A DNA stretch of 64,000 nucleotides. It comes from Stylophora pistillata (lineage: Eukaryota). The translations under genes and the position numbers were made by a program. The DNA is taken from NCBI RefSeq assembly GCF_002571385.2, contig NW_019217914.1:447597-511596 (forward strand), read 5' to 3'. Shown here piece after piece: positions 1,303-22,886 of the stretch; position 1 is the stretch's first letter; each line of letters starts with the position of its first letter. A model generated the notes under the pieces. The model was not told the origin of the DNA. It did no database searches and worked only from the letters and a program-made list of their open reading frames with translations.

Positions 1303-1504
1303 ATATATTAAAAAATTCGATTCACCTGTAACATCTCGGAAACAAAGAATTTACACAGCTGAACTTTCGAAATCGTGTGTGAAGAAAAGGCATTCTTTAA
1401 CAATCACTTCGCTTGTTGAAAGCCATTGTGAATCGTAGAAAAAGCATTTAAAGCCAGTGGGAATGTTAAATGACATTTGGAGGGTTTTTCCTCTCTGATA
1501 AGCG

Positions 1505-2542
1505 ATGAGTTCCGGAAATAGTGAAACTAATTTTACCATCGACGAAAGAATTGTCGACGGCGTTGCCTCTGAAAACATCGTTTTCGCAACGATTTACTCA
1601 ATCATTGTGTTTTTTGGTGTGATTGGCAACGGTGTTGTGATCGCCATCGTGTGTAAAACGCGATCCATGCATACAACAACAAACTATTTGCTGGTGAACT
1701 TAGCCCTGGCCGATTTACTGTCACTGTTGTTCTGTCCGGGCTTTTATGATTTCTCTTTACATAACGTAAGACTGAGTCAAACCACTGGGGATTTCATTTG
1801 CAAGGTGTTTGCAGGAAATGCTGTGCTCTCTGTCACTGTTCTAGAGTCTATTTTCACATTGACGGTCATAGCTGTGGAAAGGTACTTTTCTCTCGTGAAA
1901 CCATTTAACACAAATGCAAGACTTGGTAAAGGAAACGTCCGTCATGCAATTGTCGCAACGTGGGTATCAGCGTTGCTACTATGTTTACCAGGATTTTTAT
2001 CGAACGACTACGATCCAGAGGCTAGAGCATATCCTTGTAATCGACCATGGACTCTCGATCGACTCACGCCGTATAAAAGGACGTATATAATTGTATTTTG
2101 CAGTCTGTTTATTGTGATGCCCACAGTTGTGATTCTGTTTTGTTACTGCTCTGTTTTCTATGGAATACACTTTAAGAGAAACATCTGTTGTGAAAACTCC
2201 GCTGAAAGTGGAGAAGCGGAAAAATCCAAGAAACACCTTTTAAAGTTACTTGTCTCTCTCGCTGTAGCTTTTGCTGTTTGTTGCATTCCGTTTGCAGTGT
2301 TCTTTATTTACGTCTCCCTTATCTCAAAGAGTACACTGAAACAAAATTACTACTCTCTTCACCTTGTACACCGAGTGGTTCGCTTTTTTCTTATTCTCAA
2401 CTCTTTTATCAATCCTGTCCTTTACGCAGCGCAAAGTTCTAACTACAGACAAGGACTGAGGAGAATTAGCCGACGCTTTTTAAAAACACGTTCAAACAGA
2501 ATGGCAGAAAATAATCAAGAACATTTAGAACTCGGCGAATAG
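1505..2542 (+). CDS. Intronless rhodopsin-family (class A) GPCR, 345 aa, orphan peptide-receptor-like
   Basis: 7 hydrophobic segments; GN in TM1, NLALAD in TM2, ERY in TM3, W in TM4, ECL2 Cys, NPVLY in TM7. Confidence 0.93.
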   Translation: MSSGNSETNFTIDERIVDGVASENIVFATIYSIIVFFGVIGNGVVIAIVCKTRSMHTTTNYLLVNLALADLLSLLFCPGFYDFSLHNVRLSQTTGDFICKVFAGNAVLSVTVLESIFTLTVIAVERYFSLVKPFNTNARLGKGNVRHAIVATWVSALLLCLPGFLSNDYDPEARAYPCNRPWTLDRLTPYKRTYIIVFCSLFIVMPTVVILFCYCSVFYGIHFKRNICCENSAESGEAEKSKKHLLKLLVSLAVAFAVCCIPFAVFFIYVSLISKSTLKQNYYSLHLVHRVVRFFLILNSFINPVLYAAQSSNYRQGLRRISRRFLKTRSNRMAENNQEHLELGE

Positions 2543-3953
2543 CAGAAATTTCTTGCACTTGTAGAAGTAACCTGAGTTTAGAGTTTTTTTGTTAAATTTA
2601 TGCTGCTTTAGTAGTAAAAACCATCGCAAAGATATGGAAGCTCAATATTGCTATCTTTCGCACCCAATTTCTTCAATTAACATTGATAAAGACGATGAAA
2701 TCTGAGGATATGCATTGGTGAAGGGAACAAGGAAGATCAATTTTTCCCTCTCGAGGAAGTTGTTCGAAAATACACAAATGTGAAAGCTGATTTTCCTTTC
2801 ATCTCAACGTCATTGTGATAGTCATGGCAACTAAATGAACTCGAGATTGCTCAAATGACTCTTTATTTGGCTTATGAGAACAAGGAAATTATACATAGAA
2901 GATTCAAATTTATCAATCGATTATTCACTCAAGGGTAAGTGCAAGTGACGCTGTGGACTTGCAGGTGAATTTTCCAGAATATGGTGATTGGCAGGTGAAT
3001 ATTCAGTACGCACTAAGGCCTTCAGACTCAGAGGTTTGACAGAATATTTGACGACCTCCGCCCGGCGATATTAGATTACAGTCTATCTAAGTCGACTGTG
3101 GATGATGTTAAGACGATTCTCGAGTGAAAATGTAAACTACTTTGTTTTTTATTTATTTATTTATTTTTTTTTAGCAGATAACACTTCAGAACTGAATCAT
3201 GAATATTCCGATGGCATATTTTGGAGCACTTTATGCTTTCCGCAGCGTTAGCGCCAAGCATACCTGGCGCCTTTAATCCCATTCGGATCGGCAGCGTGTT
3301 TTTGAAATGATTAATGATGATTAATGATTGCAACGACCTTTGTGCGAAAATTGAAGCGATTTGTAATGTTATTAGACAGTAGGCATGATTGGTTTCAATC
3401 TATCTGGAGCACCTATTCTATTCAGATATTCGTGGTGTCAGATTCCGTTTAGAAAAGCGTGTTTATTTAATATTTTTAAGGTTCAGCTATTGTTTAAAAT
3501 CATAAATCCAACGTTACCTTTAAATTTTCTTAAAATTGGTATGGTGAACCGCACTAAAGAATTTCTTTTACATGAGCAGGAGTGGAAGAAGTTAGAAGGA
3601 GAGAGATAAGAAATTTGCGACACGATAAATCTGAAGCAATCATGTGCTGCTTTCGACATTCATTTCAAAGTGAATATGAGATTGCAACAATACTGTCTAT
3701 TCACATGGAAGCATCCTGCAGAAGTGTTTTGTTCAGGAAAGGCAAAAGAAGACTANNNNNNNNNNNNNNNNNNNNNNNNNNNNNNNNNNNNNNNNNNNNN
3801 NNNNNNNNNNNNNNNNNNNNNNNNNNNNNNNNNNNNNNNNNNNNNNNNNNNNNNNNNNNNNNNNNNNNNNNNNNNNNNNNNNNNNNNNNNNNNNNNNNNN
3901 NNNNNNNNNNNNNNNNNNNNNNNNNNNNNNNNNNNNTTCCTCTCTGATAAGCG

Positions 3954-4991
3954 ATGAGTTCCGGAAATAGTGAAACTAATTTTACCATCGACGGAAGAAT
4001 TGTCGACGGCGTTGCCTCTGAAAACATCGTTTTCGCAACGATTTACTCAATCATTGTGTTTTTTGGTGTGATTGGCAACGGTGTTGTGATCGCCATCGTG
4101 TGTAAAACGCGATCCATGCATACAACAACAAACTATTTGCTGGTGAACTTAGCCCTGGCCGATTTACTGTCACTGTTGTTCTGTCCGGGCTTTTATGATT
4201 TCTCTTTACATAACGTAAGACTGAGTCAAACCACTGGGGATTTCATTTGCAAGGTGTTTGCAGGAAATGCTGTGCTCTCTGTCACTGTTCTAGAGTCTAT
4301 TTTCACATTGACGGTCATAGCTGTGGAAAGGTACTTTTCTCTCGTGAAACCATTTAACACAAATGCAAGACTTGGTAAAGGAAACGTCCGTCATGCAATT
4401 GTCGCAACGTGGGTATCAGCGTTGCTACTATGTTTACCAGGATTTTTATCCAACGACTACGATCCAGAGGCTAGAGCATATCCTTGTAATCGACCATGGA
4501 CTCTCGATCGACTCACGCCGTTTAAAAGGACGTATATAATTGTATTTTGCAGTCTGTTTATTGTGATGCCCACAGTTGTGATTCTGTTTTGTTACTGCTC
4601 TGTTTTCTATGGAATACACTTTAAGAAAAACATCTGTTGTGAAAACTCCGCTGAAAGTGGGGAAGCGGAAAAATCCAAGAAACACCTTTTAAAGTTACTC
4701 GTCTCTCTCGCTGTAGCTTTTGCTGTTTGTTGCATACCGTTTGCAGTGTTCTTTATTTACGTCTCCCTTATCTCAAAGAGTACACTTAAACAAAATAACG
4801 ACTCTCTTCACCTTGTACACCGAGTGGTTCGCTTTTTTCTTATTCTCAACTCTTTTATCAATCCTCTCCTTTACGCAGCGCAAAGTTCTAACTACAGACA
4901 AGGACTGAGGAGAATTAGCCGACGCTTTTTAAAAACACGTTCAAACAGAGTGGCAGAAAATAATCAAGAACATTTAGAACTCGGCGAATAG
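3954..4991 (+). CDS. Intronless class A GPCR, near-identical copy of 1505..2542 (7 aa differences)
   Basis: Same motifs. The duplicated block 3938-5647 matches about 1487-3197 and is bounded by N gaps. Confidence 0.85.
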   Translation: MSSGNSETNFTIDGRIVDGVASENIVFATIYSIIVFFGVIGNGVVIAIVCKTRSMHTTTNYLLVNLALADLLSLLFCPGFYDFSLHNVRLSQTTGDFICKVFAGNAVLSVTVLESIFTLTVIAVERYFSLVKPFNTNARLGKGNVRHAIVATWVSALLLCLPGFLSNDYDPEARAYPCNRPWTLDRLTPFKRTYIIVFCSLFIVMPTVVILFCYCSVFYGIHFKKNICCENSAESGEAEKSKKHLLKLLVSLAVAFAVCCIPFAVFFIYVSLISKSTLKQNNDSLHLVHRVVRFFLILNSFINPLLYAAQSSNYRQGLRRISRRFLKTRSNRVAENNQEHLELGE

Positions 4992-19302: not shown

Positions 19303-20364
19303 ATGGAAATCAACATCACAGAAGAATATTCTCATCGTCATTCGGCGGCGACCTTCATCACAACTCGGGACATTATTTTTGCAGTGCTGTACTCAATTAT
19401 TGCCGTTCCAGGGGTAATAGGTAATGCTATCGTGATTACCATAGTGCGAAAAACGCCTTCAATGCACACGACCACGAACTATCTCCTCTTAAACTTAGCC
19501 GTGGCCGATTTATTGACATTGCTCCTCTGTCCTGGTCCATACGATTTAGCTCTGGTGCACGTTGACTTAGAAGGATTCACTGGGGATTTAATCTGCAAAC
19601 TGTTTGCGGGAAATGCAATTGTTCCGATCACCATCAACGCCGCCGTTCTTTCGGTTTGTACGATCGCCGTGGAAAGGTATCTAGCGCTTCTCAAACCTTT
19701 CCGCGCTAATCTAAGAATAGACAAAGATAAAGTGAAACATGTGATAGCAGTGCTGTGGTTGCTTGCCTTAATCTCATGCATCCCAGATATTCAAGCCAAT
19801 ACGTACAATATCTCGTCATCCAAATATCCTTGCAAGCGTCCTTGGAGTTTGGATGAATATTTTCTTCACAAACCCTTCATCATCTTTACTTGTGTTTGGT
19901 TCGGAATTATTAGCTCCCTGATAGTCTTCCTCTGCTATTTTTCAATCATCCGTGGAATATATTTCACAAAAACAGTTTTCTCGGAATCAACGGTAACGGA
20001 GGCTGAACGGCAAGCAAAAAAACAACTAGGTAGCCTTCTTATCTGGTTGACATTTGTATTCGCTACCTGTTCTCTGCCATTTGCAATTTACTTTATGTTT
20101 CTTAGCTTCGTTGATGTTAGAACTGTAAAGGACAATTACGACACATTGTATTTATTTCACAGAATTTCTAGATTTGTTCTCTTCACAAATTCGTTTTTAA
20201 ATCCTTTATTGTATGCTTTACAAAGTTCAAATTTTCGAGATGGATTCAAATTAATTTTTCGTTTAAAACTCCTCCGCTGTAAGCCTTTGGCAAACAGGAG
20301 AAAGAGTGGAAAAAGCTCCAGTTCGACAGGTTTTCAGTTAAGTAAAGCCGGGAAAACTAGATAA
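19303..20364 (+). CDS. Intronless class A GPCR, 353 aa
   Basis: GN, NLAVAD, ERY, YPCKRPW, NPLLY. Confidence 0.93.
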   Translation: MEINITEEYSHRHSAATFITTRDIIFAVLYSIIAVPGVIGNAIVITIVRKTPSMHTTTNYLLLNLAVADLLTLLLCPGPYDLALVHVDLEGFTGDLICKLFAGNAIVPITINAAVLSVCTIAVERYLALLKPFRANLRIDKDKVKHVIAVLWLLALISCIPDIQANTYNISSSKYPCKRPWSLDEYFLHKPFIIFTCVWFGIISSLIVFLCYFSIIRGIYFTKTVFSESTVTEAERQAKKQLGSLLIWLTFVFATCSLPFAIYFMFLSFVDVRTVKDNYDTLYLFHRISRFVLFTNSFLNPLLYALQSSNFRDGFKLIFRLKLLRCKPLANRRKSGKSSSSTGFQLSKAGKTR

Positions 20365-21594
20365 AGGAATAAACCGGCGATCCCGTGCCAGGACGTAACC
20401 AACTAATGAATGATTATAAAATACAAAATATCAATCATGTTGTGTTCAGTTGCCGTAAAACCGAGTCTTAAGAGGTTTAAAGCTTATTTTAGAATTGTGG
20501 AGGGAAATAAATAAAATAAATAAGAGTGACAATTTTCATCCGCTATGCAAATAGTTTTCAAATTAAATTTTTCTCAAAGTTATTACCATACCCATGAAAT
20601 ATCAGGTAACTTGTATATCATGGATTACAACACTACTTTACCGTTGGTACTTTGAGGTTACACAAAAGAAGAAATTTTGAAAAAGCCCTCATTACAAACA
20701 CAACACATCATTTCCTGGTTAATTCCATGGTGTCTTCTTCATAATTCAAACTCGAAAAGCCGGCCCCATGTCTTTGAAGGTAAAGATGTTTTCAAACTGG
20801 GCGAGTTGAAAGTTAATATGAATATATTTTAGTTTCGTTTGAAAAAGAGAAAGTCATGTTTTGTTTTCTAGATAATGAAAATGCAACGCAAGTTGACCAA
20901 GAATCTAACAAATTTGCCATCAAGATAAAAAAATTACGTTACTTTCGTCATTTTTATTGCCATCTGCAACGTTAAGCGGCAAGTTCAGAAATGTGCAAAA
21001 TAACATACTAAATGAGGGAATGAATTTTGGTCATGGAAGTCATTTCCATAGAAATTCAAAAAACGGAGAAAAATTTTGAAAAAGAAGCAAACTGGAGAGC
21101 TAGAGAAATCCTTGAATTGGACCCAAAGAGGTGCATATACACAACTTATGTTTACTGTACGAGTTCCTCGATATAAAGCATTGACTGATTACAAATTAGG
21201 GAGCAATATGAAAGCAGGTGAAGCTATGACTGTTCTCTAGATGTGTACTTGCTAGATTTACTTAATACTGGTTAATGTGAAAACGTCCTTCAATTTTTGT
21301 TTTTCTGCTCATAACTTTTCATTGAGATCGATATGCTTGAAAAAATGTGGGCATATTTAAGGTGGCAATCTTAGCTACCTTAAATCTCATGCAAAATGGA
21401 TTCAGAAGGAGCTCTGAAGCCTCAAATAAACAGCTTACGGTTTGAATAACTTTTCTTTTACCTACGTCATGCTAACGTCGCAGCAGGTCCCACATTTGTA
21501 ATGTGGTGACTGGGGTTTAAAACACTTTAGTCCACATTAGAAGTTATGACCTCTCCTTAGAAAGAACTTGGGTCTTTAATGAGAGGTTGGCTAT

Positions 21595-21639
21595 GCAGCG
21601 CTGACGAGCTCTAAAAAGAGCGAAACAGCTTTCCACTGC
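21595..21639 (+). ncRNA. Type I hammerhead ribozyme motif, copy 1 (stem III mismatch)
   Basis: GCAGCG CTGACGA GCTC TAAAAA GAGC GAAA CAGCT TTC CACTGC. Confidence 0.8.
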
Positions 21640-21950
21640 TGCCGCTTCCAAGGAACCAACGCTGGGCATGCGTAGTTGCTTCTATTTGGTAATGTCTTCT
21701 CCATGCTGGAGACAGACACAGATGACCGAGTTATTGGGACCCTTGATATCCATTGATGACCGAGGTGGGATGCAACCAAAATCTCTCGATGTACTGTTGA
21801 AGACACTTTTCTTATTCCTACGTCATGCTAACATCGTAGCAGGTCCCACAGTTGTAATGTGGTGACTGGGGTTTAAAACACTTTAGTCCACCTTCGAAGT
21901 TATGATATCTCATTACAAAGAACTTGTGTCTATAATGAGAGGTTGGCTAT

Positions 21951-21994
21951 GCAGTGCTGACGAGCTCTAAAAGGAGCGAAACAGCTTACACTGC
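21951..21994 (+). ncRNA. Type I hammerhead ribozyme motif, copy 2 (degenerate cleavage site)
   Basis: GCAGTG CTGACGA GCTC TAAAAG GAGC GAAA CAGCT TA CACTGC. Confidence 0.75.
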
Positions 21995-22361
21995 TGCCGT
22001 TTCCAAGGAACCAACGCTACGCATACGTAGTTACTTTGGTTTGAATAATAATGACTTTTCTCGAAATATGCCAAGAGCTGATAAATCCCTAAATGTTTCT
22101 AGAATTTTATCCTCCCTCAGGAACAGCTGAAATTACCATATTGGCTCGGATATTTTGCTTTGCTAATCGCAAACTAATCTACCAAATATGGAAAAACGCC
22201 TACTTCATATAACGAGTGCCGGAAGAGGAAATATTTGAGTGCTTCAAGAACAATTGAACCCCAGAACCTTTAAACTGTGCTTTCCTATGTTCTCTCATTG
22301 AACCAAAGTGGTGTATCAAGGCCACATGTTGGGTTTATATGTGCCAAGCATCCTGAATACT

Positions 22362-22568
22362 TAACAAATGGTAAACACCACAGCGTAGGTTCCACAGCGT
22401 ACACTATTGAGTTATGGATGCACGCGGGAGGTTGCTAAGCACGAAAGAAGCGTAAGAGTCGCGCGAGGCGATAGCTGAGAGCAACTCTAGCTTCTTAAGT
22501 GCTTAGCAACCTCCCAAGTGCATCTCTAACTCAACAGTGTGCGCTGTGGTGTTTACCATTTGTTTTAT
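22362..22568. repeat. Long palindromic MITE-like repeat
   Basis: acaaatggtaaacaccacagcg / cgctgtggtgtttaccatttgt, with internal inverted arms gggaggttgctaagcac / gtgcttagcaacctccc. Confidence 0.75.
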
Positions 22569-22886
22569 AGCATGACATTGATACATTGTAGCAAAAGAGC
22601 TCCCTTTGATTTGCCACGTCACCCATAGCCAAATGGTGGACGCTGAATTGACCAATCAGAGCGTGCGCTTTACTTTGGTTACGTTATAATGTTTGTTGGA
22701 AGAGAGGATCAAGCTAAGACACCTTTTCCTCAGAAGGCCCAAGTCTTAGGACAGTGTCACTGAAGGTTTGTGAGCGCCCGAGTTGTTTGCGGATTGTGAT
22801 GCGTAAGTAATTGTAATTAACGGTGATAAACGAGTTTTCTTATTTTGGGCGCCGGGATTTCTTCCCCAGAGGCATTTTCAATACCT

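What the first reader, a model, noticed from the sequence alone, without database searches (positions are those of the whole stretch)
21439..22048. Hammerhead-ribozyme tandem element (retrozyme) with target-site duplication
Seen: a non-coding 356-bp unit is repeated about 1.65 times and flanked by an 11-bp TSD. Each unit has stem I (GCAGYG/CACTGC, extendable across a bulge to GGC/GCC), the core CTGACGA, stem II GCTC/GAGC, GAAA, and a very short near-palindromic stem III (ACAGCT). Established: metazoan non-LTR retrozymes have this layout. Self-cleavage at successive ribozymes releases monomers that circularise, and mobilisation is attributed to Penelope-like RT. Inference: the ancestral site was GAAACAGCTGTC^CACTGC and acted as a dimer. 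Both copies here are mutated at that site, so this locus is probably a fossil of a ~356-nt circular RNA family. This particular family may be undescribed.
Basis: partly seen in the sequence, partly recalled or inferred. Interest (0 to 1): 0.8.

Follow-up and report, generated by a model that had tools for sequence, protein, structure and literature searches.

The report
Decayed hammerhead retrozyme insertion, coral genome
This is a real but dead copy of a small non-coding mobile element that carries a self-cutting hammerhead RNA motif and was pasted in the way Penelope-like retrotransposons insert; it belongs to a known kind of element, in a small and apparently extinct family.

Summary
Window 21450-22037 is 1.65 head-to-tail copies of a 356-bp non-coding unit, bracketed by an exact 11-bp duplication. 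Each unit has a type I hammerhead motif.

The genome holds only about 14 loci of this family. They share a fixed 3' end and have variable 5' truncations. Four loci carry an inverted 5' arm, and target duplications are 9-16 bp. This is the documented insertion signature of Penelope-like elements (PLEs).

One paralogue passes the Rfam Hammerhead_1 threshold. An intact natural copy folds in silico as a double hammerhead with an 8-bp helix III.

Both window ribozymes are damaged. This locus is also the only one in the assembly with two ribozymes in tandem, so no assembled locus could release a unit-length RNA. RNA runs gave almost no reads, so no circular RNA is shown.

No autonomous partner shares its sequence. 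Metazoan retrozymes, coral ones included, and their PLE link are already published. This is a new member of a known kind, of modest interest. Earlier notes of this scan describe the canonical 244-254-bp coral retrozyme elsewhere in this genome, not this family.

The parts
21439..21449 (.). Left target-site duplication GGTTTGAATAA
   Evidence: Exact 11-mer repeated at 22038-22048; chance about 0.004
21450..21805 (+). Repeat unit A (356 nt). In PLE terms, roughly the first 233 nt are a 5'-truncated upstream copy that ends at the family's 3' terminus (about 21675-21692). A full-length copy starts after that.
   Evidence: all family insertions end at unit position about 223-243
21806..22037 (+). 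Repeat unit B (232 nt, partial), ending at the family's usual 3' terminus
   Evidence: 90.9% identical to unit A over 231 nt
21589..21643 (+). Hammerhead 1 (type I, extended stem I). The ancestral cleavage site would lie between 21633 and 21634. Damaged by C at 21599 (stem I mismatch; T in paralogues) and T at 21631 (helix III; G in paralogues).
   Evidence: Rfam 28.2 bits; paralogue comparison; reads from paralogues show T>G at 21631 and C>T at 21599
21945..21998 (+). Hammerhead 2. Core and stems I and II are intact. Helix III and the cleavage site are disrupted by a 1-nt deletion plus a substitution (reads CAGCTTAC then ACTGC, 21982-21994).
22038..22048 (.). Right target-site duplication GGTTTGAATAA

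Best explanation
Window 21450-22037 is one old retrotransposition event of a 356-nt non-coding, hammerhead-bearing, non-autonomous retroelement. This is a metazoan 'non-LTR retrozyme', in effect a passenger of Penelope-like elements, in a coral-type genome. Inferred life cycle: a transcript with two or more units self-cleaves at GUC^ through two hammerheads. These pair through their palindromic helix III (ACAGCUGU) into a double hammerhead, and the released unit may be circularised by a host ligase. A PLE reverse transcriptase/GIY-YIG nuclease then copies an RNA that is continuous across the cleavage site, either a circle or an uncleaved concatemer. Copying starts at a fixed site about 40-60 nt 3' of the cleavage site and stops at a variable point. 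That yields insertions of 0.3-1.65 units with 9-16-bp TSDs and sometimes an inverted 5' arm. Shown here: the repeat, the TSD, the ribozyme motifs, the family, the insertion geometry and the decay. Inferred: self-cleavage, the dimer mode, the circular intermediate and the identity of the RT. The copy is now inert, because both ribozymes are mutated.
For: Repeat and TSD. Hammerhead. Paralogue C367 scores 36.6 bits against a gathering score of 34, and others score 30-33.6 bits. The family has about 14 loci and 20 arms, and the window's flanks are unique. The 3' end is fixed at unit position about 223-243, and 5' ends vary: 97, 113, 113, 292, 304, 352, 381 and 588 nt. The unit closes on itself at 356 nt in seven loci. 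Inverted 5'-truncated arms at C168, C206, C367 and C5 lie within single TSD-bracketed insertions of 12 and 13 bp. TSDs are 11, 12, 13 and 16 bp. These features are those listed for PLEs in PMC8557442: 5' truncation, partial tandems, an adjacent inverted 5'-truncated copy, and hammerheads in pLTRs. The genome has at least 90 GIY-YIG ORF copies with a PLE-type C-terminal architecture. The homodimer MFE of the intact natural C289 motif is a double hammerhead with an 8-bp helix III, -45.9 kcal/mol against 2 x -20.9. None of the 16 fixed differences between the two subfamilies falls in the 55-nt hammerhead, where 3.6 are expected (P about 0.017). GC is 44% and there is no ORF, as described for metazoan retrozymes in PMC7229834.
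Against: No RNA evidence. Three raw RNA runs, sampled at 2-6%, gave 0-4 reads and no pile-up of ends at the cleavage site. Only low-depth contigs appeared in one metatranscriptome, which may contain DNA. No autonomous PLE sharing the hammerhead, the 3' tail or any other part was found. The RT cores of candidate PLEs are withheld as N. Predicted folding of the unit is only modestly better than shuffles, and is equal on both strands (z -2.15 and -2.41). Self-cleavage was not tested.
Confidence: 0.85

Rival explanations
1. The copies are only 5'-truncated ends (pLTRs) of an autonomous, protein-coding Penelope-like element, not a separate non-coding family.
For: PLE insertions are mostly 5'-truncated and carry hammerheads in their pLTRs. 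The minimal hammerheads of A. millepora were ascribed to autonomous PLEs and Terminons. Three arms (C48, C289, C423) start at similar unit positions, 126-137.
Against: In seven loci the sequence upstream of unit position 1 is always unit position 234-356. In the window and C1622 it runs on into the previous unit's 3' part, so the template closed on itself at 356 nt. No copy continues into an ORF. The upstream flanks of C48, C289 and C423 are unrelated to each other. The genome holds no further match to any part of the unit.
Confidence: 0.07
2. The 1.65-unit block arose in place, by tandem duplication or unequal crossing-over of a single inserted unit (satellite birth), not by copying a multimeric or circular RNA.
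For: The preprint 10.64898/2026.07.22.740005 proposes local amplification of retrozyme arrays. The two units are only 90.9% identical.
Against: The TSD brackets the whole block. Its 5' end is a truncation point and its 3' end is the family terminus, as in the single-event composites at other loci. C1622 also exceeds one unit, at 1.06. The two units share two or three derived changes, and their divergence equals that between separate old insertions. This fits co-insertion followed by decay.
Confidence: 0.06
3. A variant of the main reading: the template was a linear, uncleaved concatemeric transcript, not a circle. Ribozyme cleavage is then not needed for mobilisation.
For: All 3' ends lie 40-60 nt past the cleavage site, so the template was continuous across it. 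Both window units may share the helix III G>T change, which would mean that the template was already impaired. That alignment is ambiguous, because unit B can also be read as a G deletion plus C>A.
Against: A circle gives the same continuity. The hammerhead stayed unchanged while the two subfamilies diverged, which argues that it mattered for propagation. Circular RNAs are documented for the canonical coral retrozyme.
Confidence: 0.3
4. The hammerhead-like motifs are chance matches in an ordinary dispersed repeat.
For: Both window motifs score below the Rfam gathering thresholds.
Against: The motif is complete in the paralogues and one exceeds the threshold. The reversed-pattern controls found nothing. 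The core and all helices are present in most of the 18 arms.
Confidence: 0.02

Closest known systems
Canonical stony-coral retrozyme (Acropora millepora, 225/245-nt units; Cervera & de la Pena 2020, PMC7229834). It is present in this genome as 254-bp arrays.
   Same: A non-coding, low-GC unit repeated in tandem, with one type I hammerhead per unit, dispersed with TSDs, in a genome with PLEs.
   Different: No sequence similarity outside the ribozyme core. The canonical hammerhead has a stable capped helix III and scores 38.6-40.4 bits. This family's helix III is a loopless 8-nt palindrome. The canonical family forms long arrays and is highly expressed. This family has about 14 loci and at most 1.65 units, and RNA reads are almost absent.
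Amphibian retrozymes (axolotl, Xenopus) and newt satellite hammerheads that act as dimers
   Same: Units of about 300-350 nt. Type I hammerhead with a very short palindromic helix III, expected to need a double-hammerhead conformation (abstract; cofold).
   Different: The host is a cnidarian. PMC7229834 reports efficient monomeric cleavage for most invertebrate retrozymes. Activity was not tested here.
Minimal hammerheads in pLTRs of Penelope-like elements and Terminons
   Same: Minimal helix III. The insertion geometry matches: 5' truncation, partial tandem, inverted arm, variable TSD, no poly(A).
   Different: The unit has no ORF and closes on itself at 356 nt. No autonomous element in this assembly shares its hammerhead or its tail.
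Rfam Hammerhead_HH9 (RF02275)
   Same: Stem II and loop 2 (GCUC-NAAAAA-GAGC) and an extended stem I with an internal loop align well.
   Different: Scores of 21-34 bits are far below HH9's gathering score of 52. HH9 is a conserved amniote intronic motif, not a repeat. The resemblance is in the motif only.

Membership tests
Hammerhead ribozyme, type I (Rfam RF00163) | Conserved core CUGANGA ... GAAA and an NUH cleavage triplet | tested here: met
   Present in both window copies, except that the cleavage triplet of copy 2 is disrupted. GUC is present in most paralogues.
Hammerhead ribozyme, type I (Rfam RF00163) | Three helices with helix I open (type I topology) | tested here: met
   Stem I is 6 bp plus 3 bp across an internal loop, and stem II is 4 bp with a 6-nt loop. 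Helix III is a loopless palindrome that can pair fully only between two motifs.
Hammerhead ribozyme, type I (Rfam RF00163) | Score at or above the curated gathering threshold (34 bits) | tested here: inconclusive
   Window copies: 28.2 bits, and 21.3 bits for the HH9 model, both below threshold. Paralogue C367: 36.6 bits, above threshold. Other paralogues: 30-33.6 bits.
Hammerhead ribozyme, type I (Rfam RF00163) | Self-cleavage activity | not testable with these tools
   Only in silico evidence: the double-hammerhead MFE of a natural intact copy. No read ends pile up at the site.
Metazoan non-LTR retrozyme (PMC7229834) | Non-coding unit of 150-450 bp in head-to-tail copies, each with a type I hammerhead; GC below 50%; no LTR, PBS or PPT | tested here: met
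   356-bp unit, 1.65 copies, GC 44%, no ORF over 71 aa.
Metazoan non-LTR retrozyme (PMC7229834) | TSDs longer than the 4 bp of plant retrozymes; dispersed copies | tested here: met
   TSDs of 11 bp (window) and 12, 13 and 16 bp at other loci; about 14 loci.
Metazoan non-LTR retrozyme (PMC7229834) | Expressed as linear and circular unit-length RNA | tested here: inconclusive
   0-4 reads in sub-sampled raw RNA runs, and low-depth contigs in one metatranscriptome. No joint or end signal. No assembled locus has two working ribozymes in tandem.
Passenger of Penelope-like elements | PLE insertion geometry: fixed 3' end, frequent 5' truncation, partial tandems, adjacent inverted 5'-truncated copy, variable TSD | tested here: met
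   compared with PMC8557442.
Passenger of Penelope-like elements | Sequence similarity of its terminus to the pLTR of an autonomous PLE in the same genome | tested here: not met
   No match outside the family for the unit, the hammerhead or the 3' tail. Only a few PLE loci could be read, and their RT cores are withheld.

The most novel reading that the evidence does not exclude
The family's geometry says something general about how animal retrozymes are copied. Every insertion starts (3' end) at one site 40-60 nt past the self-cleavage site and reads through that site. The RT template is therefore never the cleaved linear monomer; it is a circle or an uncleaved concatemer. The window's 1.65-unit insertion may come from a template whose helix III was already weakened. 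In that case a ribozyme-impaired concatemer can still be mobilised by the PLE machinery, and cleavage matters for RNA accumulation rather than for integration.
Probability: 0.3. Interest if true: 0.45.

Novelty: new member of a known kind. Interest (0 to 1): 0.3.

Why it matters
[quoted passage not shown] That preprint tested the proposal mainly in vertebrates. The unit here is small and non-coding, carries the PLE-type minimal (dimer-dependent) hammerhead, and shows the full PLE insertion signature. In Acropora, such minimal motifs had been assigned to autonomous elements. The fixed 3' end downstream of the cleavage site limits what the reverse-transcription template can be. The locus itself is an inert fossil with no sign of a host function.

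Tried and rejected
- TRF missed the repeat; the repeat finder and the alignment show it.
- I searched for an autonomous partner by whole unit, hammerhead pattern, helix III pattern and 3' tail. Only family members came back, plus one unrelated single hit at C345.
- BLAST of the unit against the canonical 254-bp array and against 14 GIY-YIG loci gave nothing significant.
- I asked whether the short arms at C48, C289 and C423 are the 3' ends of one longer element. This is rejected, because their upstream flanks are unrelated.
- I looked for an empty-site haplotig. The flanks are single-copy in the assembly.
- Unit folding has z about -2 on both strands, which is not diagnostic.
- No tRNA-like module is present.
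- The 11-nt identity between the left flank (21428-21438) and hammerhead 2 is at chance level, P about 0.10.
- RNA runs gave no support for expression or for ends at the cleavage site.
- The RT parts of candidate PLE ORFs read N (withheld). I did not try to fill them.
- I built no full-length consensus of the element.

Full report
**1. The observation**

Window 21436-21631 repeats at 21792-21987 (89% identity), and 21631-21688 repeats at 21986-22043 (84%). The spacing is 356/355 nt (alignment). The repeated block, 21450-22037, is 588 nt, or 1.65 units.

The block is bracketed by the exact 11-mer GGTTTGAATAA at 21439-21449 and 22038-22048. In random placements within this window, a shared word of 11 or more between two such 60-nt windows occurs 0.4% of the time. 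Here it lies exactly where similarity to the family stops.

The element has no ORF longer than 71 aa and no tRNA-like module, and its GC is 44%.

Rfam finds Hammerhead_1 at 21595-21639 (28.2 bits, E=5.7e-4, gathering score 34). The second copy matches the related HH9 model at 21938-22013 (21.3 bits).

**2. The family**

The genome is 398 Mb in 5,513 contigs. Public runs that hold this stretch are labelled 'coral metagenome' or carry one coded species label.

The genome holds only about 14 loci and 20 arms of this unit, at 78-94% identity to the window copy. The window's flanks are single-copy.

I laid every copy on the 356-nt unit, with position 1 at window 21450. Two regularities appear:
- All copies end at unit position about 223-243, in the sequence ...GCGTAGTTGCTTC....
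- They begin at variable positions, giving lengths of 97, 113, 113, 292, 304, 352, 381 and 588 nt.

In seven loci the stretch before position 1 is positions 234-356 of the same unit. In the window and in C1622 it runs on into the preceding unit. The template therefore closed on itself at 356 nt.

Four loci (C168, C206, C367, C5) carry an inverted 5'-truncated arm, head-to-head with the direct arm. At C168 and C206 the whole composite lies between one TSD, of 12 and 13 bp. C2663 has a 16-bp TSD. There is no poly(A).

PMC8557442 lists exactly these features for Penelope-like elements: high 5' truncation, partial tandems forming pLTRs, an adjacent inverted 5'-truncated copy, and hammerheads in pLTRs.

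The genome has at least 90 GIY-YIG ORF copies. Their visible C-terminal parts show the PLE-type HTH-plus-GIY-YIG layout. Their RT cores are withheld as N, and I did not try to fill them.

**3. The ribozyme**

Across 18 arms that cover the motif, the commonest state has these parts:
- stem I GCAGUG/CACUGC, extended to GGC/GCC across a UAU/U internal loop;
- the core CUGACGA;
- stem II GCUC/GAGC with a 6-nt loop;
- GAAA;
- the palindrome ACAGCUGU;
- the cleavage C.

Paralogue C367 scores 36.6 bits on Hammerhead_1, above the gathering score. Others score 30-33.6 bits.

Helix III has no loop, so it cannot form fully within one motif. The homodimer MFE of the natural intact C289 motif is a symmetrical double hammerhead with an 8-bp helix III, at -45.9 kcal/mol against 2 x -20.9. 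Its monomer MFE is a non-hammerhead fold, and the two window copies do not form that helix.

This is the dimer-dependent design known from amphibian retrozymes and PLE hammerheads.

The two subfamilies (main, and C206/C5) differ at 16 fixed positions. None lies in the 55-nt ribozyme, where 3.6 would be expected (P about 0.017). This suggests the ribozyme was under constraint while the family was active.

**4. State of this locus and of the family**

Unit A has a stem I mismatch (C at 21599) and a broken helix III (T at 21631). Unit B has a 1-nt deletion plus a substitution at helix III and the cleavage site.

The two units share two clear derived changes, and possibly the helix III G>T. That last alignment is ambiguous. 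They now differ by 9%. This points to one template followed by long decay, much of it at CpG.

Only 5 of 18 arms keep all pairs and the core when G-U pairs are allowed. Only one arm (C289) is fully Watson-Crick. Each of these is a solitary motif.

The window locus is the only assembled locus with two ribozymes in tandem on one strand. No assembled locus could therefore release a unit-length RNA.

RNA evidence is consistent with this:
- Three raw RNA runs, sampled at 2-6%, gave 0-4 reads, and those carried paralogue-type letters.
- Nothing fell on the flanks, and no ends piled up at the cleavage site.
- One coral metatranscriptome has low-depth contigs of the element but none of its flanks. That is weak evidence, since DNA cannot be excluded.

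One ENA metagenome contig ends in an 86%-identical copy with an intact motif, so relatives exist outside this assembly.

**5. Mechanism**

Shown: the geometry described above.

Inferred:
- A transcript with two or more units self-cleaves through a double hammerhead.
- The unit may be circularised by a host ligase, as proposed for coral, mussel and axolotl retrozymes (PMC7229834).
- A PLE RT/GIY-YIG enzyme copies it by target-primed reverse transcription.

All 3' ends lie 40-60 nt downstream of the cleavage site, and the cDNA runs through that site. The template therefore cannot be the cleaved linear monomer. It must be a circle or an uncleaved concatemer, and the data cannot separate the two.

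**6. Partner**

No autonomous element shares the unit, its hammerhead, its helix III or its 3' tail.

The short arms at C48, C289 and C423 are independent truncated copies, not ends of one longer element.

The canonical 254-bp retrozyme of this genome (hammerhead 38.6-40.4 bits) is unrelated outside the ribozyme core. A PLE-type ORF at C520 carries that canonical-type hammerhead about 230 nt upstream.

**7. Comparison and verdict**

Metazoan non-LTR retrozymes, coral ones included, were described in 2020 (PMC7229834). A 2026 preprint (10.64898/2026.07.22.740005) argues that they are non-autonomous PLE derivatives. It states that this was not examined outside vertebrates.

This locus is a correct call of a known kind. 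The family is small, old and apparently extinct, with a dimer-type hammerhead. In Acropora such minimal motifs had been assigned to autonomous elements.

Earlier notes of this scan describe the canonical coral retrozyme and PLE-style passengers elsewhere in this genome. None that I retrieved describes this family.

The novelty rating is new member of a known kind, and interest is modest.

I built no consensus of the element. Whether a restored family sequence should be made for assays is left to a person.

Noticed in passing
window 22353-22600: A palindromic, MITE-like repeat of about 230 bp (arms 22368-22451 / 22490-22573) with over 1,500 first-look candidates genome-wide at 88-94% identity. 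It is heavily covered in RNA runs on both strands, with many strand-switch joints.
   Followed up: partly
window 19303-20364 (+): An intronless 353-aa rhodopsin-family GPCR ORF (Pfam 7tm_1, E=2.9e-38) lies 1.07 kb upstream. The element sits in silent DNA downstream of it.
   Followed up: partly
G000 C28:1248043-1249111, C137:446353-446911, C199:255613-256425, C77:512211-512515 (L035, L043-L057): Arrays of the canonical coral retrozyme with a 254-bp period and hammerheads of 38.6-40.4 bits. Solo ends abut (TA)n tracts.
   Followed up: partly
L090 (G000 C520:62500-69500), ORF 2928-4442 (-), hammerhead 4671-4713 (-): A GIY-YIG ORF whose RT core reads N carries a canonical-type hammerhead about 230 nt upstream of the ORF on the same strand. 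This links that ribozyme type to a PLE-like element.
   Followed up: partly
L092 (ENA contig ERZ1740055 NODE-83032), 1438-1548 (-): A metagenome contig ends in an 86%-identical copy of this family's 3' 110 nt with an intact hammerhead. Relatives therefore exist outside this assembly.
   Followed up: partly
L012 (C5:754720-757911) and L016 (C2056:7635-10810): These two loci share the same left flank and the same inverted arm (96% identity) but differ in the rest of the insertion. They are probably haplotigs or a segmental duplication with a deletion between 12-bp direct repeats.
   Followed up: no
window 21428-21438: An 11-nt identity (AAACAGCTTAC) with hammerhead 2 (21979-21989) directly abuts the left TSD. 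A local-alignment null gives P about 0.10, so it is treated as chance.
   Followed up: yes
G000 C345:144072-144104 (-): A single hammerhead-like hit shares the GAAACAGCTGTC end but has a different, poorly pairing stem II. Its context could not be read.
   Followed up: no
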